Both the position numbers and the translations under genes were made by a program. Under the pieces are notes generated by a model. That model was given only the letters and a program-made list of their open reading frames with translations, ran no database searches and was not told the DNA's origin. DNA of 63,831 bases, filler included, from Octopus bimaculoides (lineage: Eukaryota), in NCBI RefSeq assembly GCF_001194135.2. It is 7 parts of 7 records of this genome, joined end to end, with 100 filler letters (N's around TTAATTAATTAA, not from the genome) between each part and the next. Parts side by side here need not be neighbours in the genome. Positions count along the whole stretch, not along the records: positions 23,239 to 34,300 come from NC_069000.1; 6 more parts are not named here. One strand, given 5' to 3'. Of the stretch, positions 23,690-34,021 are shown in pieces (the stretch's first letter is position 1; each line of letters opens with the position of its first letter).

Positions 23690-24987
23690 TGCTGGAGATA
23701 TGAAGAATGCAGTAGAGGAATAACTACTGTAGGGCTGCTTTGTAGACGACATTTTTTGTCTTTCCTTCAGGAGCATAGATGAATATGTTTTGTCTGGATG
23801 GTCAACTCTGGAACAACTGACATGGAATTGTCCATGTGAAAAACACGATGTTCGAAGGTCCACTCAGATAACTTTGAACGACTGACCTTGTGCTTTGTTA
23901 ATTGTCATGGTGAAGCTGAGTTTGAGAGGGAACTGAAATCTCTGCATAGGTTAGGGGCTGTCTTTTGGGGTTAGCGGAATTTTCGGAATGAAAACAATAT
24001 CGTTTTTGCCATGTCCCGTGATAATTTGGGCTTCAATGACGTGGTCCATCATTTATTTGACCACAAGCCGAGTTCCTTTGCGCTGTGTGGGTGCGTTTAG
24101 ATTGCGTAGGAAGATGATAGGGCAACAGACTTTTAAGTGAATTTCATGGGGATGGAGTCCTGTAGGATCTTGGGAGTTGAAAAATTCTGTTGGAAAGTGT
24201 GTAAGCTGACCGAGGTCGGTAACGGTGTCAACTGATCTGTAACAATGTTCTTGAGAAGGTAGCTGACTAAGTCATAGTTAAGAATGTTGACAGCTGCACT
24301 TGTAGGTGCAAGAACAGCCCTGTCACAAAGCCAATCTGGTTTTATTTATTCCATTGTAAGATTTGGGTAAACGGCAGAATATGTCATCAGGGCTGGAGAC
24401 AGTAGCGTCAATGTATACATTGTTGTTGGATGTAATTTTTCCATTGCCGATTTTAAGGAGCATTTCCGAAAACTGGATTGTAGGCTGACCAGTCTGTAGG
24501 AGTGATCTCATGTTGATGGTGAGTTGTTTCGATTGGATATGCGACCAAAGGAGGGATATTTTTAAGGCAGGCATTAAGTTCACCAGCGGGTGTTCCTTTG
24601 TGTATAATAGGCAGAGTTTGTCAAAAATCTCCTGCAAGAAGTAGAGTCGCAACTCCAAGGATGTTTGCTCTACGGTCTCTCATTGTAGGAAACATTTGTG
24701 GGACATAGTTGCTTCATCCCAAACAATGAGTTTGCGCTTTTTCAAAATTGTCATTTCGTCCGAAGAATGCCTTATGTGGCTCGTTGAGTTTTCTTGATGT
24801 GCTACATTGAAAGGCAATTTGAAGGTAGAGTGTGCTGTTCGTCCGCCGTCGAGAAGAGTCGAGGCTATTCCTGAGGGGGCAACAGCAATAGCAAGGTCGC
24901 CATTATGCCGAAACTTAGCAAGAAGAAGATTTAAGAGGAATGTTTTCCCAGTTCCAACAGGTGCTTCTAAGAAGCTAATTCTGCCAN
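23690..24987 (-). mobile_element. Helitron Rep/Hel remnant (PIF1-family helicase domain), frameshifted
   Basis: Walker A region FLEAPVGTGKTFLLN, then AVAPSGIASTLLDGGRTAHSTFKLP, LIVWDEATM, LLKIGNG, TINKAQGQS and CFSHGQFHVSCSRV across several frames with stops. The 5' part runs into an N gap. Confidence 0.92.
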
Positions 24988-25764
24988 NNNNNNNNNNNNN
25001 NNNNNNNNNNNNNNNNNNNNNNNNNNNNNNNNNNNNNNNNNNNNNNNNNNNNNNNNNNNNNNNNNNNNNNNNNNNNNNNNNNNNNNNNNNNNNNNNNNNN
25101 NNNNNNNNNNNNNNNNNNNNNNNNNNNNNNNNNNNNNNNNNNNNNNNNNNNNNNNNNNNNNNNNNNNNNNNNNNNNNNNNNNNNNNNNNNNNNNNNNNNN
25201 NNNNNNNNNNNNNNNNNNNNNNNNNNNNNNNNNNNNNNNNNNNNNNNNNNNNNNNNNNNNNNNNNNNNNNNNNNNNNNNNNNNNNNNNNNNNNNNNNNNN
25301 NNNNNNNNNNNNNNNNNNNNNNNNNNNNNNNNNNNNNNNNNNNNNNNNNNNNNNNNNNNNNNNNNNNNNNNNNNNNNNNNNNNNNNNNNNNNNNNNNNNN
25401 NNNNNNNNNNNNNNNNNNNNNNNNNNNNNNNNNNNNNNNNNNNNNNNNNNNNNNNNNNNNNNNNNNNNNNNNNNNNNNNNNNNNNNNNNNNNNNNNNNNN
25501 NNNNNNNNNNNNNNNNNNNNNNNNNNNNNNNNNNNNNNNNNNNNNNNNNNNNNNNNNNNNNNNNNNNNNNNNNNNNNNNNNNNNNNNNNNNNNNNNNNNN
25601 NNNNNNNNNNNNNNNNNNNNNNNNNNNNNNNNNNNNNNNNNNNNNNNNNNNNNNNNNNNNNNNNNNNNNNNNNNNNNNNNNNNNNNNNNNNNNNNNNNNN
25701 NNNNNNNNNNNNNNNNNNNNNNNNNNNNNNNNNNNNNNNNNNNNNNNNNNNNNNNNNNACATAC

Positions 25765-25801
<37 letters not shown>

Positions 25802-28800
25802 CATGCATACATACATACATACATACATAGTCAATTCAAATAAACGAACAATTCAAACAGAAAAACGATAAAAACGAGCGCGAGGACGTGCACATGAAAT
25901 GTATTAGCTTGACACTCGGTGAAAGGAGAGAGTTTGACGGTTGAGCATAGTTCTTCGTCGGAAAGGAGAAAGGGAAAAGTCCAAGGATGGATACGAAATC
26001 GTCAACGGCACACATGTAGTTATATTACTGAAGTGACATATATATATATGTTTGTGTACCTTTGTCCCCACACCATAACAGTTGGATACAGTCTGTAGTA
26101 GCTGCATATGTTTTAGAATTTTTATATTATTTTTTAAATGATGCCCTTTTATTGGTCAAGGTTTTTCTACGTCCGTGACGGAGTATATATTTAGTTTAAA
26201 ATCTCAGGACGTATTTTAGTATTAGAAATTCTGTCTAACGCTACCGATGACGAGTGTGAGACAGGCATGTAATTTATGTACACATGAAGCACTTCAAATT
26301 CTAATGACAAATGATTATTATTTATCAAATTAATGAGGCGAATTTGTGATTATTGTTTCTAATATAGGTACAAAGTATGAAACTTAGGGGAGGGGGTGAA
26401 TCGATTCGAACATAACGCATCCCCTGGTCCGGTAACTGAGGCGTTGTATTCTTGAGGAAAGAGAACACGTGTAGTTTAAGGTTTAGGGTTTTCGGTTCAC
26501 GATCGTGAGTTCAATTCCCAGACACAAACACACACACACATACACACACTCACACACACGTAAATTATATATACGACGGGCTTCTTTTAGTTTCCGTCTC
26601 CCAAATCCACTCACAAGGCTTTGGTCGGCCAAAGGCTATGATAGAAGACACTTGCTCAAAGTGCCACGCAGTGGAACTGAACCTGGAATCATGTGGTCGG
26701 AAAGCAAGCTTCTTACCACACACTCAATTACATGCTTGAATTGACGAAATTCAAGTAAGGAGTACGAACATATGCATTAAAACGCTTTTAATTCCTGATT
26801 TCTCTCTTCTTGCTTCTTTTTCTTTTATTTTAATCATTGTAAGGATCACGAAATTATTGGTTTGAACTGAAACATGCATGTGAAGGATGGAGTACTACGA
26901 ATGGGTCAATAAACAATATACCTCGAAGACTATTATCTTTTATCCGTTTACTTGTTTCGGTCGTCGGACTGCAGCCATAATGGAACAATGCATGAAAGGT
27001 TTTAGTCCAGCGGTTCTCAACCGGGGTCCATTTCTATGGTAAATAAATCACGTAGAAGCTAACGGACACGAAAAATTGCTGTTATAACCAGTGCAGGAAA
27101 TATTAAAATTTGAATAGAAATACGTCTATCCTCGTTTATCACGGATGTTTGGTTTGTCTTCTGATTAAAAAAAAAAGAAACTATGAATCAGTGATAAATG
27201 AATAATCGATGATATGGATAAGGCGTAAGTTTTGGCTCCGAGTCTCCAAGTTATTCTGAACATTGTGAGTAGAAATTGAAACGGATTTTCGTGATTCTTA
27301 TTATTAAAAATCAATTCGTGATAAGCATAACACGGTTCAGTATTAGCGTACCGCGTTATCCCCAGCATCAGTGAAGAATGAATTAGTGACAAAAGGGATA
27401 GGTGCAATAATGTGATGGAGAAATAAAAAATGTCAATGAAATAATATTTTAGTTAATTTAGCAAGCAAGGGAGGCGACTGAGGAAATTTATTCTCAGAGC
27501 AATTAGAGTTTTCTCCCATTTCACCTCAACACTTTTAAAAGAGTTCTGTTGTTGCCTATATATATANNNNNNNNNNNNNNNNNNNNNNNNNNNNNNNNNN
27601 NNNNNNNNNNNNNNNNNNNNNNNNNNNNNNNNNGGGATAGTCATTTTTTTTTTTGTGCCTTATAATTTAACACACTCACCGTTAAAATTTCCACTTATTT
27701 CTTATTTTTATTTTCCTAAAATTTTCGTTGCGTCTTGCAACCTTTTCAACAGTCTTGACTGTCCGTTATTTACGCTGCGTTCTTTTTTTTTTTGCTTTTG
27801 TTTGTTTTTGCGCATGCGTGTGTCTCAGTGTGTGTGTATGTATGCATGCATGTATGTGTGCATGTGCGTACGTACGTATGTCTGTGTGTGTGTGCATATG
27901 TATATGTGTATGTATGTGTGTGTATGTATATATGTATGTATGTGTGTGCGTTTGCATGTATGTATGTATGTATTCTGCATATTCCTGTGTTTGTGTGCCT
28001 TTTATGTATGTGTGTGCATGTGTGTATATGCATGTATGTACCTCTGTCTCCTTGTGTGTGCATGTCTGAGTGTGTGTGTGTTTTGCTGCTATGTACTATC
28101 CAAAAACGAAATATATATATATCTCTTCGAAACGCCTGTGTTAGAATGGGGGCAGCTTATGAAGGAAAATGTTCTCTATGTGGCCTGTGTGTTTTCAGTA
28201 CTCTGATTATTATTATTTTTTGTCTACGTTTTGTTTGCAATGTCCTGTACCCAGATATGCACCTATATATACAGGTAGATGTAGGTATGCACATACTTGT
28301 ACGTATATATGCATATACTCATTTATTATTTGTTTTATATAGATATATACATACACTTATATTAAGTGCTCTATTATTTCCAATTTATAGGAGGATTAAT
28401 TTTACAATTTCTTTAAAGGACAGTATACACTTTAATATTTTTTAATATTTTAATTAATATTACATATACCATTCGTTCTTAACACATAGATTATAAATCC
28501 ATTCATCTCCGAAGAGCGGAATTATCGATAGTATGCTGATCTTTTGATTACATTGTGGTTACAATAATATCCGCGAAACGATCGTCAGATGTAAATTTTT
28601 TTTTAATTTTAGACTTTTTAAAATTTTAGACTTTATAATATTCATGCTCAATTACGCATAAATTTTTATATGCATTTATATTCACATGTATCTTTATCTA
28701 CATTCATATTTTTATATATATTTATATTTATATTTCGTATATCTTAAATTTTAAATTTATTATATTACCATGNNNNNNNNNNNNNNNNNNNNNNNNNNNN

Positions 28801-29087
28801 NNNNNNNNNNNNNNNNNNNNNNNNNNNNNNNNNNNNNNNNNNNNNNNNNNNNNNNNNNNNNNNNNNNNNNNNNNNNNNNNNNNNNNNNNNNNNNNNNNNN
28901 NNNNNNNNNNNNNNNNNNNNNNNNNNNNNNNNNNNNNNNNNNNNNNNNNNNNNNNNNNNNNNNNNNNNNNNNNNNNNNNNNNNNNNNNNNNNNNNNNNNN
29001 NNNNNNNNNNNNNNNNNNNNNNNNNNNNNNNNNNNNNNNNNNNNNNNNNNNNNNNNNNNNNNNNNNNNNNNNNNNNNNNNNNNNNNN

Positions 29088-29124
<37 letters not shown>

Positions 29125-29622
29125 CGACGGGCTTCTTTCAGTTTCGTCTACCAAATCCACTCACAAGTCTTTTTGGTCGGCCCGAGGCTATTGTAGAAGA
29201 CACCTGCCCAAGGTGCCACGCAGTGGGACTGAACCCGGAACCATGTGGTAGGTAAGCAAGCTACTTACCACACAGCCACTCCTGCCTCAATTATGTGTAA
29301 AAAAACAAAAAACAAAAAACAAAAAACAAAAAAAAACTCTTCAATATTAAATTGAAAAATTATTCAAAACATTTGTACAGAATATGTTTATTAAATCTTT
29401 ACAAGAAAGGGTGACTGTGACTTCGAAGTTTCGGCCTGCTAGCCTTCGTCAGATTATATATATATTAATGAAGGAAATTCTAATAAATGGACGGTAGACA
29501 AATGATTCTAGAATTTACCATTGATAGATCAAGAGGTTTCAGTTTCTTTCGTTAGTTGTATAATATTTTTCATTTTTATTTGTTTTGTTTTTTTGTTTTC
29601 GGCTTTCTTTTTGTGTTTTGTT

Positions 29623-29670
29623 TTTATTGTTTTCCAGCTACAATAATTTATTTTAGTTATTTCCTTTATT
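29623..29670 (-). terminator. Candidate polyadenylation signals of the FGF gene
   Basis: Three minus-strand AATAAA hexamers (plus-strand TTTATT at 29623-29628, 29647-29652, 29665-29670) within 70 nt of the stop. The context is AT-rich, so usage is unproven. Confidence 0.35.
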
Positions 29671-29691
29671 CCGGTCGTCTTGATTTCTCCT

Positions 29692-29877
29692 TCACATATC
29701 TTTTATTGGTAAAAACTGGGAATGTTTCTTTCGTGTTCGAGACTTTCTGCCGTTTTTTATTCTGCCGCGTTTGCTAATAGCAAGGAACCATTTTTTGTTG
29801 GAATATTTCTCTGATTTGTAAAGCGTGTATAGATTTTTCATCTTTTCGTGGAAAGTACAAGACTCATCCTTGGTCGG
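29692..29877 (-). CDS. FGF1/2: FGF coding exon 3 (terminal): PTKDESCTFHEKMKNLYTLYKSEKYSNKKWFLAISKRGRIKNGRKSRTRKKHSQFLPIKDM*
   Basis: Acceptor CCTTTTTTTCCAG|CCG, phase 0. Contains the invariant C-x-F-x-E, Y-x-x-Y-x-S, W-F/Y-x-A and C-terminal F-L-P motifs. TGA at 29694-29692. Confidence 0.95.
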   Translation of the reverse strand, partial: PTKDESCTFHEKMKNLYTLYKSEKYSNKKWFLAISKRGRIKNGRKSRTRKKHSQFLPIKDM

Positions 29878-29980
29878 CTGGAAAAAAAGGAATGGAAATC
29901 GAAAGTGAAAAATAAGTTGAGGAAAGGAAATCAAAATATCAATTAGCATTTTGAAATATTAATTAACATTTTGTTTAGAC

Positions 29981-30566
29981 CAGTGCTCTGCAATCGGTAT
30001 ATCTGTCGCAGCACACTGGTGTGTCACGTGACGATGCTAGGTGTTCCACGAGACGATGCTATATGTGCCACGAGACGATGCTAAGTGTGCCACGAGACGA
30101 TGCTAGGTGTGACACGAGACGATACTATGTGTGACACGAGATGATGTTATGTATGACACGAGACGATGCTAGGTGTGCCACGAGACGATGCTATGCGTGC
30201 CACGAGACGATGCTATGTGTGACATGAGACGATGCTATGCGTTCCACGAGACGATGCTAGGTGTGCCGCGAGACGATGCTATGCGTGTCACGAGACGATG
30301 CTATGTGTACCACGAGATGATGCTATATGTTCCACTAGACGATGCTAGGTGTACCACGAGATGATGCTATGTGTACCACTAGACGATGTTAGGTGTGCCA
30401 CGAGACGATGCTATGTGTGCCAAGAGGCGATGCTAGGTGTGCCGCAGTTTAACCTGAATATAATTTTTTCCCCTATACTTTTAGTTATACTTTTAGTCCA
30501 GGTATACCGCCGGATTTTAAAAAGAATATAAGTGTACCACAAATGGAAAAAGGTCGCAGAACACTG
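29981..30566. mobile_element. hAT MITE in FGF intron 2 carrying an internal minisatellite
   Basis: TIRs CAGTGCTCTGCAA / TCGCAGAACACTG. TSD GTTTAGAC / GTTTAAAT (6 of 8 match). Confidence 0.75.
30025..30442 (+). repeat. 22-bp tandem minisatellite, 19 copies (consensus CACGAGACGATGCTAKGTGTGC)
   Basis: Units counted directly with an exact 22-bp period (30025 + 18x22 = 30421 is the last unit start). No spacers. Confidence 0.97.
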
Positions 30567-30971
30567 GTTTAAATCCTAGTGATTCGATTAAAGACGTTCC
30601 TGTCATCATCATAATTTATTCAGTCATACTGAGTGTCGTATCTATAGATACAGGATTCAGTCTTTTATCGTTTATCTTCCACTTGTTTTAGTCATTGGAC
30701 TGCAGTCATTTTGGTGTGCCACCACGAAGGGTTTACTCGGACAAATCGACCCCGTACTTTTGTGTTTACGTTTGCTTTATGCACTATCGGACACTTTTGC
30801 CGAACCGTTAAGTTATGGAGATTTTAACAAACAACCACTGGTTATCAATCGATGGTGGGGGACGAACACTCACATATGTGTGAGTTTATGAATATATGTA
30901 TGCATGTATTTATGTATGTATGTATGTATGTATGTATGTATGTATGTATGTATGTATGTATGTATGTATAA

Positions 30972-31217
30972 AGGCCTGTGATATGCAGAAGACCTACTGG
31001 GTGAGCAATGCCCGTCATCGCCACAGATGGAGGAAACAGGTTAAGGAGGGTGTCGACACCTTTGAAAGAGCACGTATTCTTCATGAAGAATTTAAGCATG
31101 ATGTTCGAAAGCGCACTGCTATCGTAGTGAATGGGGAAAGCTTGGTCTGCAATGTCTGCAGTCGTGTATGCTTGTCAAGAGCAGTGCTCATTATTATCCA
31201 CCAACGGAGCCGCAAAT
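30972..31217 (+). mobile_element. RTE/BovB-type LINE 3' fragment with C2H2 zinc finger
   Basis: W...A..R..WRK.V..GV..FE followed by CNVCSRVCLSRAVL..HQRS, typical of the RTE ORF C-terminus. Confidence 0.8.
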
Positions 31218-31259
<42 letters not shown>

Positions 31260-31652
31260 CTTTGCGTTTGTGTTTGTCCTCCATCACTGCTTGACAACCG
31301 GTGTTGATGTGTTTATGACCCTATAACGCAGCGGTTCCGATAGAATAAGTATGGTTGTGTGGGCAGGCAAATACTCAGTCTGTTATAGGGTTATCCATTT
31401 TATACATGAGTGGACTGGAGCAACGGGAAATGAAGCGTTTCGCTTAAGAACGCAACACATCGCCGATCTGAGAACTGAAACCACAATCGGGCGATCTTGA
31501 ATCCAACACCCTAACCAATAGGGCTCATGCATCCACACACACAGACATACTCAATGACAGAGAGAGAGGGTGGATGATGGAGAGGGGAAAATCGAAAGAG
31601 AGAGAGAATGACAATGAAAAAAGAAAAGAGAAGCAATAAAATAAATAGTTAC

Positions 31653-31756
31653 CACACCACATAAAACTCCTTTGTTATTAAATGCCAAGTATCGGCCGCT
31701 CTGCACTCCTTTGATTGTTACTATTCCTGTATCCACTGTTTCAAACTGCAACAAAG
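31653..31756 (-). CDS. FGF1/2: FGF coding exon 2 (104 nt): (S)LLQFETVDTGIVTIKGVQSGRYLAFNNKGVLCGV
   Basis: Acceptor TTTTCTTTTAACAG|CT and donor GTG|GTAACT. The exon is 104 nt, phase 1 to phase 0, the size and phases of the conserved middle exon of vertebrate FGF genes. Motif G-x-V-x-I-K-G-V-x-S-G-R-Y-L-A-x-x-x-x-G is the FGF core. Confidence 0.95.
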
Positions 31757-31775
31757 CTGTTAAAAGAAAATGTAT

Positions 31776-32001
31776 ATCATCATCATCGTTTAACGTCCGC
31801 TTTCCATGCTAGCATGGGTTGGACGATTTGACTGAGGACTGGTGAAACCGGATGGCAACACCAGGCTCCAGTCTGATTTGGCAGAGTTTCTACAGCTGGA
31901 TGCCCTTCCTAACGCCAACCACTCAGAGAGTGTAGTGGGTGCTTTTACGTGTCACCCGCACGAAAACGGCCACGCTCGAAATGGTGTCTTTTATGTGCCA
32001 C
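31776..32001 (-). mobile_element. RTE-tail SINE/LINE 3' end with (GAT)n tail in FGF intron 1
   Basis: CATCATCATCGTTTAACGTCCGCTTTCCATGCTAGCATGGG motif. The same family occurs at 1449-1623(-), 13095-13193(+) and, more diverged, ~11480-11755(+). Confidence 0.85.
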
Positions 32002-33619
32002 NNNNNNNNNNNNNNNNNNNNNNNNNNNNNNNNNNNNNNNNNNNNNNNNNNNNNNNNNNNNNNNNNNNNNNNNNNNNNNNNNNNNNNNNNNNNNNNNNNN
32101 NNNNNNNNNNNNNNNNNNNNNNNNNNNNNNNNNNNNNNNNNNNNNNNNNNNNNNNNNNNNNNNNNNNNNNNNNNNNNNNNNNNNNNNNNNNNNNNNNNNN
32201 NNNNNNNNNNNNNNNNNNNNNNNNNNNNNNNNNNNNNNNNNNNNNNNNNNNNNNNNNNNNNNNNNNNNNNNNNNNNNNNNNNNNNNNNNNNNNNNNNNNN
32301 NNNNNNNNNNNNNNNNNNNNNNNNNNNNNNNNNNNNNNNNNNNNNNNNNNNNNNNNNNNNNNNNNNNNNNNNNNNNNNNNNNNNNNNNNNNNNNNNNNNN
32401 NNNNNNNNNNNNNNNNNNNNNNNNNNNNNNNNNNNNNNNNNNNNNNNNNNNNNNNNNNNNNNNNNNNNNNNNNNNNNNNNNNNNNNNNNNNNNNNNNNNN
32501 NNNNNNNNNNNNNNNNNNNNNNNNNNNNNNNNNNNNNNNNNNNNNNNNNNNNNNNNNNNNNNNNNNNNNNNNNNNNNNNNNNNNNNNNNNNNNNNNNNNN
32601 NNNNNNNNNNNNNNNNNNNNNNNNNNNNNNNNNNNNNNNNNNNNNNNNNNNNNNNNNNNNNNNNNNNNNNNNNNNNNNNNNNNNNNNNNNNNNNNNNNNN
32701 NNNNNNNNNNNNNNTATATATATATGCGATATATGCGATATGTGCGTGTGCGTGTATATAAGTATGTATGTATATTTTTCACAAATCTCAGATTTAAGTA
32801 TGTCCCTTTCTAGGGCCTCTTTGGAGGCTCCTGCAAGCCTCTAACTCTGTAGATTCTTCTCCCTCACCCTATTACATATAACTACAATTTAATTTATAGG
32901 TTTTACACTTTTTCTTGCTTGCCCCTTTTCCACACTTTACCCATAATTTACATCTTTAGGAAATACTGACATTGCTAAAATATGACTATCTAACAGCTAT
33001 TAATTTGAACAACTAGATAACGAAAATTGTAACTTGGTTTATTATACCGTACACCTAGGAAACGTTTACCTATGAAACTATGTATGATATCTGCTTACAC
33101 CATAAATGAAGTGATGGTTAATTTTATATAAAAATAAACGGAACAAATTTCCTTCCGAGTCATAGGCTCATACGGTCGGTTTCCCAGATTCTGTGATGCA
33201 TACATCACCCATCCCTAGACGGGATGAAACAAATAAAAGATGAAAGAACATAACTAAACATCTTAAAAAACCTGTTCATCATCACTTTACTAATTTTGAC
33301 TGTTTGATCAGCTAGCTGAATCACTCCAAAATATAGGTGTAAAATTTGGGCACAAGGCCAGTAAGTTTGAGGAAAGAGTAAGTCGATTACAGCAACCCCA
33401 GTGTCAAAATGGTACTTATTTTATCGACCCGGAAAGAATAAAAAGCTTAGTCGATCTCGGCGAAATTTGAACTAAGAACGGCAAGCATTTTGCCCCTAAG
33501 CGTTTTGCCCGGTGTGCGAAAGACTCCGCCAGTTCACTGTTCTAGTAACGTTCTGAAAATATTAGGGAGCACAAGTAAGCAAAGATGAAACAGAACCATT
33601 CTGTCAAAGCTAAACCTAC

Positions 33620-33782
33620 AGTTGTTATCCACGTGTTGAACGCTGCTGTATACGAGTCCATCTTCGTTGATGCATAAGAAATAACCTGTCCGACTGATTA
33701 ATTTCTTCGTTGGTTGCCATTTGTTCGGATTTGGATTAAATCTGAAATCGTTTGGTAATGGAATTGGTTCTTCCAAAGTCAT
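33620..33782 (-). CDS. FGF1/2: Fibroblast growth factor (FGF1/2-like), coding exon 1: MTLEEPIPLPNDFRFNPNPNKWQPTKKLISRTGYFLCINEDGLVYSSVQHVDNN + 1 nt
   Basis: KKLISRTGYFLCINEDG aligns with FGF beta1-beta2 strands (FGF1 KLLYCSNGGHFLRILPDG; FGF9 QLYCRTGFHLEIFPNG). Phase-1 donor T|GTAGGT at 33620/33619. Upstream acceptor TTTATCTTTGCAG|GGAACAATG at 33789/33788 implies a further 5' exon. The subfamily label is inferred. Confidence 0.9.
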
Positions 33783-33818
33783 TGTTCCCTGCAAAGATAA
33801 AAGTAAAAAATATTTTTA

Positions 33819-34021
33819 GGTGTGGCTGTGTGGTAAAGAAGTTTAGTTTACTTCCCAAACACACGGTCCTGGGTTCGGTCCTACTTGGGCAAATGTCTTC
33901 TGCTATAGAGCCTCGGGTCGACCAAAGCCTTGTTAGTGGATTTGGTAGAGGGAAACTGAAAGAAGGCCGTCGTATATATATGTACATATATACATACATA
34001 CATATGTGTGTGTGTGTGTGT

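What the first reader, a model, noticed from the sequence alone, without database searches (positions are those of the whole stretch)
29692..33788. Complete signal-peptide-less FGF1/2-like gene with vertebrate-type exon architecture
Splicing the three minus-strand exons gives an uninterrupted 150-aa FGF. The intron phases (1, then 0) and the 104-nt middle exon match vertebrate FGF genes. The short SEKYSNKKWF loop, overall length and lack of a hydrophobic leader resemble FGF1/FGF2, which are exported by non-classical routes; SRTG in strand 1 instead resembles FGF9/16/20. The first family-conserved Cys (FGF1 LYC) is replaced by Ser, and new Cys residues appear in FLCIN and VLCGV. The C-terminal heparin-binding segment KRGRIKNGRKSRTRKK is unusually basic and could double as a nuclear localisation signal. 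The ORF track shows only three disconnected fragments.
Basis: partly seen in the sequence, partly recalled or inferred. Interest (0 to 1): 0.75.

Follow-up and report, generated by a model that had tools for sequence, protein, structure and literature searches.

The report
Octopus leaderless FGF gene, already annotated
The three minus-strand exons really do encode a 150-residue fibroblast growth factor without a secretion signal, but it is the gene already listed in RefSeq as "fibroblast growth factor 1" of Octopus bimaculoides, and its FGF1/2 label is the best guess rather than a proven placement.

Summary
Exons 33782-33620, 31756-31653 and 29877-29692 (minus strand; 163+104+186 nt; GT-AG introns; phases 1 and 0) give a 150-aa protein. 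It matches Pfam FGF over the full domain (E 4e-33). It is residue-for-residue identical to RefSeq XP_014772942.1, "fibroblast growth factor 1 [Octopus bimaculoides]".

The assembly gap lies inside intron 1 and does not touch the reading frame. Both flanks are collinear with the gap-free O. sinensis locus.

The gene is under purifying selection (dN/dS 0.18 against O. sinensis) and has no hydrophobic leader. An O. vulgaris model adds 31 hydrophilic residues from exons at least 8.6 kb upstream, outside this piece, so "complete" is uncertain but "leaderless" holds.

The subfamily is not resolved. Among recognised subfamilies, FGF1/2 together with arthropod FGF1-like proteins is the plurality placement in NJ bootstrap, approximate ML placement, HMM scores, loop length and leaderlessness. 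FGF9/16/20 is not excluded. FGF11-14 is effectively excluded. No relative above 45% identity exists outside Octopus.

It is most likely a heparan-sulfate-binding FGFR ligand exported without a signal peptide. An intracellular role is the main rival.

Verdict: an already annotated, functionally unstudied gene of modest interest.

The parts
33620..33782 (-). First coding exon of the RefSeq model (ATG 33782-33780). Encodes residues 1-54 plus the first base of codon 55. Donor GT at 33619-33618.
   Evidence: 87% protein identity to O. sinensis exon at L001 10001-10163. Donor conserved.
33783..33790 (-). Conserved splice acceptor (AG 33790-33789 after a pyrimidine tract) and 6-nt leader GGAACA (33788-33783), which reads Gly-Thr in frame with the ATG. 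The exon therefore probably begins at 33788.
   Evidence: tttgcag|GGAACAATG here, tttacag|GGAACAATG in O. sinensis. The O. vulgaris protein CAI9737405.1 reads ...LLCAK-GT-MTLEE across this junction.
31757..33619 (-). Intron 1 (phase 1), containing the assembly gap 32002-32714.
   Evidence: The orthologous intron in O. sinensis is about 6.0 kb and has no N, so the gap length here is probably underestimated.
31653..31756 (-). Second coding exon, 104 nt, covering residues 55-89. Acceptor AG at 31758-31757, donor GT at 31652-31651.
   Evidence: O. sinensis exon 2 is at L001 16180-16283 with conserved splice sites. From direct reading of the sequence, the nearby alternative acceptor (tgcag|TTTGAA, exon start 31745) would give an in-frame TGA.
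29878..31652 (-). Intron 2 (phase 0). It holds a 22-bp tandem repeat array (30019-30443, about 19 copies) and microsatellites.
29692..29877 (-). Third coding exon, covering residues 90-150 plus stop TGA (29694-29692). It encodes the heparin-binding glycine box G127-x4-G132-x2-S135 and the basic run K125-K140.
   Evidence: 93% protein identity to O. sinensis L001 17378-17563.
29328..29691 (-). Probable 3' untranslated region. It is conserved with O. sinensis at about 91% and has AATAAA motifs at 29670-29665 and 29652-29647. Its extent is not verified.
   Evidence: One alignment block covers window 30110-29328 and L001 17147-17934 at 91%. Motifs read. No transcript data.

Best explanation
This is the Octopus bimaculoides gene that RefSeq names fibroblast growth factor 1.

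Shown:
- It is a conserved, selected, three-coding-exon gene.
- It encodes a small (17.4 kDa), very basic (pI 9.8) protein with the FGF beta-trefoil domain and no N-terminal signal peptide.

Inferred:
- It acts as a heparan-sulfate-binding paracrine or autocrine ligand of the octopus FGF receptor.
- It leaves the cell by a route that does not need a signal peptide, or on cell damage, as vertebrate FGF1 and FGF2 do.
- Its basic C-terminal surface (strands 10-12) binds heparan sulfate and could also serve nuclear import.

In evolutionary terms it is a fast-evolving FGF seen so far only in Octopus. Its nearest recognised relatives are the FGF1/2 subfamily in the broad sense, meaning vertebrate FGF1/2 plus the leaderless arthropod FGF1-like proteins. 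That placement is a plurality, not a statistically supported result.
For: Identity: the spliced product is an exact match to XP_014772942.1 / A0A0L8HER9. Orthologues exist in O. sinensis (94% identity, same three exons and splice sites) and O. vulgaris.

Family: Pfam FGF at E 4.4e-33 over the full domain. The AlphaFold core (residues 30-125) has pLDDT 77-94. The top Foldseek PDB matches are FGF1 and FGF2 (probability 1.0, TM 0.6-0.7).

Selection: dS 0.158, dN 0.028, dN/dS 0.18.

Leaderless: N-terminal hydropathy maximum is 0.34, and 0.90 in the extended O. vulgaris form.

Heparin site: the glycine box G-x4-G-x2-S is kept, and 10 of 16 residues in K125-K140 are basic.

Receptor surface partly kept: N107, Y109, Y112, L148 and the F-L-P motif in FGF1 numbering.

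Subfamily:
- The best human hit is FGF1, 81 bits against 75 for FGF20.
- All natural PDB hits in the top 60 are FGF1.
- HMM scores are arthropod FGF1-like 119, vertebrate FGF1/2 108, vertebrate FGF9/16/20 80 and FGF11-14 75.
- The strand 9-10 loop has 9 residues, as in FGF1 and 27 of 32 arthropod FGF1-like proteins.
- 27 of 30 arthropod FGF1-like proteins are also leaderless.
- ML placement without orphan sequences gives FGF1/2 in the broad sense a weight of 0.90.

Expression hint: an O. vulgaris hemocyte transcriptome lists one FGF1 transcript and FGFR2 transcripts (PMC4199593). Whether that transcript is this gene is not verified.
Against: No transcript, secretion, heparin or receptor data were available here.

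Three positions that contact FGFR in FGF1/2 are changed in both octopus species compared (O. bimaculoides and O. sinensis): Tyr30 to Ile, Arg50 to Val or Ile, and Asn110 to Thr. The near-universal Gly48-Thr49 is Ser-Ser. Tyr30 is aromatic in almost every canonical FGF. The Asn110-to-Thr change is less worrying because 3 of the 4 FGF8/17/18-group sequences compared also have Thr there.

The subfamily placement collapses when long-branch invertebrate FGFs are included. The broad FGF9/16/20 HMM scores 116, only 3 bits below the best.

The structure model used an alignment made only of vertebrate FGF1 sequences, so its resemblance to FGF1 is partly built in. Its C-terminal 24 residues are of low confidence.
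Confidence: 0.6

Rival explanations
1. It is an intracellular (intracrine or nuclear) FGF. It would work like vertebrate FGF11-14 or nuclear FGF1/FGF2 isoforms rather than as a receptor ligand.
For: It has no signal peptide under either gene model. It carries a very basic run, KRGRIKNGRKSRTRKK, that could act as a nuclear import signal. Receptor-contact residues Tyr30, Arg50 and Asn110 and the Gly48-Thr49 pair are all replaced, and the replacements are conserved between the two species compared. At the Asn110 position FGF11-14 carry Val, a change that I recall being linked to their failure to bind FGFRs.
Against: It is not related to FGF11-14: HMM score 75, 0% of NJ bootstraps, RELL 0.004. It has Thr rather than Val at position 110, as receptor-binding FGF8/17/18 do, and a 9-residue loop against 13. 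The heparin-binding glycine box typical of extracellular paracrine FGFs is intact. Leaderless FGF1 and FGF2 are nevertheless exported.
Confidence: 0.2
2. It is a derived member of the FGF9/16/20 lineage, or of a spiralian-specific FGF clade, that lost its N-terminal region. It would then not be a relative of FGF1/2, and the resemblance to FGF1 in size, loop length and lack of a leader would be convergent.
For: Published spiralian FGFs outside FGF8/17/18 are all FGF9/16/20-like (PMC8224027; PMC8180254). The broad FGF9/16/20 HMM scores 116 against 119. Placement on FGF9/16/20 is only 2.2 lnL units worse, with RELL 0.26. The RTG motif in strand 1 and its 12-residue length match FGF9. With all sequences included, the protein groups with secreted orphan FGFs of cnidarians, an annelid (Owenia), hemichordates and tunicates.
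Against: Octopus already has a separate FGF9/16/20-type gene, P0136, named FGF20, FGF3 or let-756-like. The vertebrate FGF9/16/20 HMM scores 80 against 108 for FGF1/2. The loop length is 9, against 13 in vertebrates and 10-12 in invertebrate FGF9-like proteins. The grouping with orphan sequences has support of 0.33 or less and looks like long-branch attraction.
Confidence: 0.15
3. It is a conventionally secreted FGF whose signal peptide is encoded by an upstream exon that lies outside this piece and is missed by current models.
For: A conserved acceptor lies 6 nt upstream of the ATG and the frame is open across it. Upstream exons exist at least 8.6 kb away in O. sinensis. Most of the orphan invertebrate FGFs nearest in the tree have hydrophobic leaders (6 of 11 reach the 2.2 hydropathy cut-off).
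Against: The only model that uses upstream coding exons (O. vulgaris, 181 aa) adds MKITRLTDNACSKPDLVSSSRKQSLLCAKGT. That stretch is hydrophilic, with a hydropathy maximum of 0.90. Two independent RefSeq models start at the ATG at 33782.
Confidence: 0.04
4. It is a pseudogene or an annotation artefact.
For: No direct transcript evidence was examined here. Repeats crowd the locus, and a SINE-like element ends about 40 nt from the ATG exon.
Against: The frame is intact, all four splice sites are canonical and conserved, dN/dS is 0.18, and three species carry it with the same structure.
Confidence: 0.01

Closest known systems
Vertebrate FGF1 (acidic FGF) and FGF2 (basic FGF)
   Same: About 150-155 residues and no signal peptide. 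The strand 9-10 loop has the same length as in FGF1. It has the heparin-binding glycine box, the second conserved Cys (Cys98 in FGF1 numbering) and a three-coding-exon layout with a 104-nt middle exon. FGF1 gives the best BLAST, phmmer and Foldseek matches.
   Different: Identity is only 35%. Strand 1 lacks the extra residue of the vertebrate NGG motif (12 residues against 13). Tyr30, Cys31, Gly48, Arg50 and Asn110 are replaced. The protein is much more basic than FGF1. It is not placed inside the vertebrate FGF1/2 clade by any tree.
Arthropod FGF1-like proteins (the Tribolium FGF1a/1b group, assigned to FGF1/2 in PMC3420111)
   Same: They are mostly leaderless (27 of 30). They share the strand 1 length and RTG motif and the 9-residue strand 9-10 loop. 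They give the highest subfamily HMM score (119) and the best ML placement among recognised groups, on their stem.
   Different: Identity is 31-37%. The arthropod proteins have lost Cys98, carrying Thr, Gly or Asn instead, whereas octopus keeps it. They end in GQKAIQFLPR, whereas octopus has RKKHSQFLPI. Support for the grouping is below 50% in bootstraps.
FGF9/16/20 subfamily, including C. elegans LET-756 and the second octopus FGF (P0136)
   Same: There is no cleavable signal peptide, the RTG motif is present in strand 1, and the proteins bind heparin. This is the only non-FGF8 subfamily so far described in spiralians.
   Different: FGF9/16/20 proteins are longer, with an N-terminal extension of about 60 residues, and have a longer strand 9-10 loop (13, or 10-12 in invertebrates). 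The vertebrate HMM scores 28 bits lower than FGF1/2. Octopus has a separate gene of this type.
FGF11-14 (FGF homologous factors, intracellular)
   Same: They have no signal peptide and have lost the canonical Asn at the position that contacts the receptor linker.
   Different: FGF11-14 have Val at that position and at position 138, a 13-residue loop and long N- and C-terminal extensions. They give the lowest HMM score (75) and essentially zero tree support.

Membership tests
FGF family (Pfam PF00167, beta-trefoil growth factors) | Full-length match to the FGF domain profile above the curated threshold | tested here: met
   114.3 bits against a cut-off of 24, E 4.4e-33, profile positions 3-124 of 124.
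FGF family (Pfam PF00167, beta-trefoil growth factors) | Beta-trefoil fold | tested here: met
   In the AlphaFold model, residues 30-125 have pLDDT 77-94 and form 10 strands. Foldseek top hits are FGF1 and FGF2 with probability 1.0. The last two strands are of low confidence, and the alignment contained only FGF1 sequences.
FGF family (Pfam PF00167, beta-trefoil growth factors) | Three coding exons, with introns in phase 1 and phase 0 at conserved positions and a 104-nt middle exon | tested here: met
   The window side was computed and is conserved in O. sinensis. The vertebrate side of the comparison is from my recall of published gene structures and was not re-derived here.
Paracrine, heparan-sulfate-dependent FGFs | Glycine box G-x4-G-x2-S/T and a basic cluster in strands 10-12 | tested here: met
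   G127-RIKN-G132-RK-S135, with 10 basic residues in positions 125-140. Actual heparin binding cannot be tested with these tools.
Paracrine, heparan-sulfate-dependent FGFs | Conserved FGFR-contact residues (FGF1 Tyr30, Arg50, Asn107, Tyr109, Asn110, Leu148, Leu150) | tested here: inconclusive
   Asn107, Tyr109 and Leu148 are kept, and Leu150 is Ile. Tyr30 is Ile, Arg50 is Val or Ile, and Asn110 is Thr (Thr also occurs in FGF8/17/18).
FGF1/2 subfamily | Phylogenetic placement with FGF1/2 | tested here: inconclusive
   NJ gives 43% (without orphan sequences) or 4% (with them) inside an FGF1/2 plus FGF1-like-only clade. Approximate ML placement gives weight 0.90 and RELL 0.53 without orphans, but the best placement falls on a tunicate orphan when they are included.
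FGF1/2 subfamily | No N-terminal signal peptide | tested here: met
   Hydropathy maximum 0.34, against FGF1 0.77, FGF2 1.24 and secreted FGFs 2.5-3.3. No dedicated signal-peptide predictor was available.
FGF1/2 subfamily | Strand 9-10 loop length as in FGF1 | tested here: met
   9 residues between the Tyr112 and Trp122 equivalents. FGF1 has 9, FGF2 has 6-7, FGF9/16/20 has 13, FGF7/10/22 has 11 and FGF8 has 7.
FGF1/2 subfamily | Vertebrate-type strand 1 (LYC-x-NGG, 13 residues to the DG turn) and both conserved cysteines | tested here: not met
   The sequence is LISRTGY, with 12 residues. Cys31 is Ser, while Cys98 is kept.
FGF1/2 subfamily | Conserved synteny with FGF1 or FGF2 neighbours | not testable with these tools
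   The 11-kb piece and the 27.5-kb O. sinensis locus contain no other host gene.
FGF9/16/20 subfamily | Long N-terminal extension, 13-residue strand 9-10 loop and best profile match | tested here: not met
   There are 24 residues before the core, the loop is 9 residues, and the vertebrate HMM scores 80 against 108 for FGF1/2. Tree placement is not excluded (RELL 0.26).
FGF11-14 (FGF homologous factors) | Val at the Asn110 position, Val at position 138, a 13-residue loop, and a clade with FGF11-14 | tested here: not met
   Thr, Ser and 9 residues respectively. HMM score 75, NJ 0%, RELL 0.004.

The most novel reading that the evidence does not exclude
The gene would be a true spiralian member of the FGF1/2 subfamily, retained in octopods. 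The developmental literature has reported no FGF1/2 member in Spiralia, where only FGF8/17/18 and FGF9/16/20 types are described. Its altered receptor-contact residues (Tyr30 to Ile, Gly48-Thr49 to Ser-Ser, Arg50 to Val, Asn110 to Thr) and its extreme basicity would mark a shift towards an intracellular or nuclear role, or a non-canonical receptor-binding mode. No relative above 45% identity was found outside Octopus.
Probability: 0.2. Interest if true: 0.45.

Novelty: already known. Interest (0 to 1): 0.2.

Why it matters
As a sequence feature it adds nothing new. The exact protein has been in RefSeq and UniProt since the O. bimaculoides genome annotation, and orthologues are annotated in O. 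sinensis and O. vulgaris.

Its modest value is comparative. Reviews and developmental papers list only FGF8/17/18-type and FGF9/16/20-type ligands in spiralians (PMC3420111, PMC8180254, PMC8224027). They infer an FGF1/2 gene in the protostome ancestor from arthropods alone.

A leaderless, FGF1-length FGF under purifying selection in octopus is a candidate for the missing spiralian representative. If a well-sampled phylogeny or synteny confirmed that, it would firm up the ancestral bilaterian FGF set. It would also give cephalopod biologists a third ligand to consider alongside the FGF receptor in arm growth, regeneration and hemocyte biology.

Tried and rejected
1. A single-sequence AlphaFold run gave pLDDT 35 and was unusable.
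3. A profile search meant to name invertebrate relatives returned 120 vertebrate FGF1 proteins. A second search, built from octopus plus orphan invertebrate FGFs, returned only 4 hits. Neither found a named molluscan or other spiralian orthologue, so the distribution outside Octopus remains unknown.
4. NJ on all 144 core domains recovered the vertebrate subfamilies but put octopus in a poorly supported mix of long branches: Exaiptasia, Owenia, hemichordates, tunicates and the other octopus FGF. I read this as long-branch attraction, not as a clade.
5. Asn110 to Thr was considered as evidence for loss of receptor binding. It was rejected as decisive because the FGF8/17/18 sequences carry Thr there.
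6. The alternative acceptor 11 nt downstream in exon 2 was rejected because it gives an in-frame stop. This comes from direct reading of the sequence.
7. The Rfam scan of the piece found nothing.
8. Literature searches for octopus or cephalopod FGF ligands found only a transcriptome listing.
They were used as subfamily labels, as extra tips in the trees and as members of the subfamily HMMs. Those that had close database relatives among the hits were 74-100% identical to them. The rest (FGF4, 7, 8, 9, 13, 14, 17-19, 21-23) are unverified.

Full report
**What is in the sequence**

On the minus strand, three segments join into one open frame:
- 33782-33620, 163 nt
- 31756-31653, 104 nt
- 29877-29692, 186 nt

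Together they make 453 nt, encoding 150 residues and a TGA stop. Both introns have GT donors (gtaggt, gtaact) and AG acceptors behind pyrimidine tracts. Their phases are 1 and 0.

A second acceptor-like AG lies 11 nt inside exon 2. Using it would give an in-frame TGA, so it is not the site.

**The gap**

The N run 32002-32714 lies entirely within intron 1 (33619-31757), so it cannot change the frame. Continuity across it is supported in three ways.
- Both flanks align in the same order and orientation to an N-free chromosome-level locus of Octopus sinensis. Window 33602-33225 aligns to L001 10924-11304, and window 31777-31352 to L001 16159-16583.
- The Pfam FGF profile runs through the exon 1/exon 2 junction without a break.
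- Three independently annotated orthologues have no extra residues there.

The same intron is about 6.0 kb in O. sinensis and 1.86 kb here. The 713-N placeholder therefore probably understates the missing sequence.

**Identity**

The protein matches Pfam PF00167 at E 4.4e-33 over positions 3-124 of 124. An exact-sequence look-up shows it is already public as XP_014772942.1 / UniProt A0A0L8HER9, "fibroblast growth factor 1 [Octopus bimaculoides]".

The O. sinensis orthologue (XP_029647533.1) is 94% identical, with the same exon boundaries and splice sites. Between the two species dS is 0.158, dN is 0.028 and dN/dS is 0.18. That indicates purifying selection on a working gene.

A published O. 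vulgaris hemocyte transcriptome lists one FGF1 transcript along with FGFR2 transcripts (PMC4199593). I could not check that it is this gene.

**The 5' end**

Six nucleotides upstream of the ATG lies a conserved acceptor, tttgcag|GGAACAATG here and tttacag|GGAACAATG in O. sinensis. The frame stays open across it.

The O. vulgaris model CAI9737405.1 is 181 residues long. It reads MKITRLTDNACSKPDLVSSSRKQSLLCAK-GT-MTLEE..., so it uses that acceptor. Its 55-nt exon, encoding (C)SKPDLVSSSRKQSLLCAK, lies at L001 1323-1378. That is 8.6 kb upstream of the ATG exon in O. sinensis, with its own AG and GT. A further exon must supply the first ten residues.

These exons fall outside this piece, which ends 512 nt upstream of the acceptor. 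"Complete" is therefore true of the RefSeq coding sequence but not certain for the gene.

The extension is hydrophilic, with a highest 9-residue hydropathy of 0.90. The RefSeq N-terminus scores 0.34. Human FGF1 and FGF2 score 0.8-1.2, and secreted human FGFs score 2.5-3.3. The "leaderless" claim survives either model.

**Relatives**

An exhaustive HMMER scan of 1.84 billion cluster representatives found 564 FGFs at E of 0.001 or better. Only the Octopus cluster itself scored below 1e-30. The next hits are 34-45% identical:
- copepod proteins with two FGF domains
- amphioxus FGFA
- insect "FGF1-like" proteins
- Trichinella FGF20
- teleost FGF1

No squid, other mollusc or other spiralian orthologue was identified. 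Two profile searches meant to name such relatives failed to do so.

**Subfamily**

I extracted 144 core domains and aligned them to one profile (127 columns). NJ with 300 bootstraps recovers the vertebrate subfamilies:

| Subfamily | Bootstrap support |
|---|---|
| FGF1/2 | 0.55 |
| FGF3 | 0.99 |
| FGF4/6 | 0.98 |
| FGF5 | 1.00 |
| FGF7/10/22 | 0.67 |
| FGF8/17/18 | 0.79 |
| FGF9/16/20 | 1.00 |
| FGF11-14 | 1.00 |
| FGF19/21/23 | 0.82 |

It places octopus in none of them. With long-branch invertebrate FGFs present, octopus joins them in 85% of replicates. These are Exaiptasia, Owenia, hemichordates, tunicates and a second octopus FGF, P0136. The closest partner, an Exaiptasia FGF, has support of only 0.33. 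I read this as long-branch attraction.

I also ran an approximate ML placement. It used a rate matrix derived from BLOSUM62, four gamma rate categories, an NJ backbone with ML branch lengths, and RELL resampling. With the orphans included, the best ML placement is on a tunicate tip (weight 0.74, RELL 0.33), and several alternatives lie within 3-5 lnL units. With the orphans removed, the results are:

| Placement | NJ bootstrap | ML likelihood weight | RELL |
|---|---|---|---|
| FGF1/2 plus arthropod FGF1-like | 43% | 0.90 | 0.53 |
| FGF9/16/20 | 17% | 0.07 | 0.26 |
| FGF19/21/23 | 12% | below 0.01 | below 0.01 |
| FGF11-14 | 0% | below 0.01 | 0.004 |

Subfamily HMM scores (bits) agree in direction:

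| HMM | Bits |
|---|---|
| Arthropod FGF1-like | 119 |
| Broad FGF9/16/20 | 116 |
| Vertebrate FGF1/2 | 108 |
| FGF4/5/6 | 96 |
| FGF7/10/22 | 93 |
| FGF3 | 91 |
| Vertebrate FGF9/16/20 | 80 |
| FGF19/21/23 | 80 |
| FGF8/17/18 | 79 |
| FGF11-14 | 75 |

Discrete characters lean the same way.
- The strand 9-10 loop has 9 residues, as in FGF1 and 27 of 32 arthropod FGF1-like proteins. FGF9/16/20 and FGF11-14 have 13, FGF7/10/22 has 11, and FGF8 has 7.
- 27 of 30 arthropod FGF1-like proteins are leaderless.
- Against this, strand 1 lacks the extra residue of vertebrate FGF1/2.
- The RTG motif is shared by FGF9/16/20 and arthropod FGF1-like proteins alike.

FGF1/2 in the broad sense is therefore the best label. 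FGF11-14 is excluded. FGF9/16/20 is unlikely but open.

**Likely function**

Several features are kept:
- the second family cysteine
- Asn107, Tyr109, Tyr112, Leu148 and the FLP motif (FGF1 numbering)
- the heparin-binding glycine box G127-x4-G132-x2-S135
- ten basic residues between positions 125 and 140

The calculated pI is 9.8.

With an alignment of 30 sequences, AlphaFold gives a beta-trefoil core with pLDDT 77-94 for residues 30-125. The best PDB matches are FGF1 and FGF2. The alignment contained only FGF1 sequences, so this confirms the fold and not the subfamily.

Several positions are changed in both O. bimaculoides and O. sinensis:
- Tyr30 to Ile
- Cys31 to Ser
- Gly48-Thr49 to Ser-Ser
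- Arg50 to Val or Ile
- Asn110 to Thr

The Tyr is aromatic in nearly all canonical FGFs. Thr at position 110 also occurs in FGF8/17/18, so it does not by itself argue against receptor binding.

My reading, which is inferred and not shown, is a heparan-sulfate-bound ligand of the octopus FGF receptor that is exported without a signal peptide, as FGF1 and FGF2 are. The main rival is an intracellular or nuclear role.

**Comparison with the literature**

Oulion et al. (PMC3420111) place Tribolium FGF1a/1b and other arthropod genes in FGF1/2. In Lottia and Capitella they find only FGF8/17/18-like and FGF9/16/20-like genes. Later work on brachiopods, phoronids and annelids says the same (PMC8180254; PMC8224027).

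I found no paper that discusses this octopus gene beyond a transcriptome listing.

**Verdict**

The open points are its true subfamily, its 5' exons and its mode of action.

Noticed in passing
window 24323-24986, minus strand: Remnant of a PIF1-like helicase of the kind carried by Helitron transposons. Pfam PF05970 gives E 3e-26 for 24680-24986 and a weaker second fragment at 24323-24658. The frame is broken, and the remnant is cut off by the assembly gap 24987-25758.
   Followed up: partly
window 30019-30443 (FGF intron 2): Tandem array of about 19 copies of a 22-bp unit (GTGTGCCACGAGACGATGCTAT, 84% matches). The orthologous site in O. sinensis (L001 17147-17239) holds only about 4 units, so the array has expanded or contracted since the species split.
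   Followed up: partly
window 26506-26742 (+), 29090-29285 (+), about 33830-33990 (-): Three copies of one SINE-like repeat family that also occurs many times in the O. sinensis locus. The third copy ends about 40 nt upstream of the FGF ATG exon and is at the orthologous position in O. sinensis, so it predates the species split.
   Followed up: partly
window 24987-25758, 27567-27633, 28773-29087, 32002-32714: Simple-sequence runs (CATA, CA or AT) sit directly beside three of the four N gaps, and another lies within about 200 nt of the fourth (27567-27633). This suggests the assembly broke at simple repeats. Intron 1 is about 4 kb shorter here than in O. sinensis, so the 713-N gap is probably an underestimate.
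   Followed up: partly
L001 1323-1378 (O. sinensis), 8.6 kb upstream of the FGF ATG exon: A 55-nt internal exon with its own AG and GT. It encodes (C)SKPDLVSSSRKQSLLCAK and is used by the 181-residue O. vulgaris model. It resembles the upstream alternative 5' exons that I recall for vertebrate FGF1. Whether it is coding or untranslated in O. bimaculoides is unknown.
   Followed up: partly
proteins P0002 (Tigriopus californicus, 361 aa) and P0010 (Lepeophtheirus salmonis, 329 aa): The best non-octopus hits are copepod proteins with two complete FGF domains in tandem in one leaderless chain. First domains group with first domains and second with second (bootstrap 0.71 and 0.60). This implies an old internal duplication in copepods.
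   Followed up: no
protein P0136 and its cluster (Octopus vulgaris, O. bimaculoides, O. sinensis): A second, longer octopus FGF (216-300 aa) is named FGF20, FGF3 or let-756-like by different sources. It scores best against the FGF9/16/20 profile. It shows that automatic FGF names in octopus are inconsistent.
   Followed up: partly
window protein residues 37 and 87; O. sinensis residue 53; O. vulgaris residue 97 in 150-residue numbering: Cys37 and Cys87 are lineage-specific and conserved in all three Octopus species. O. sinensis and O. vulgaris add a further Cys at 53, and O. vulgaris has Cys-Cys at 96-97. Whether any pair forms a disulfide was not examined.
   Followed up: no
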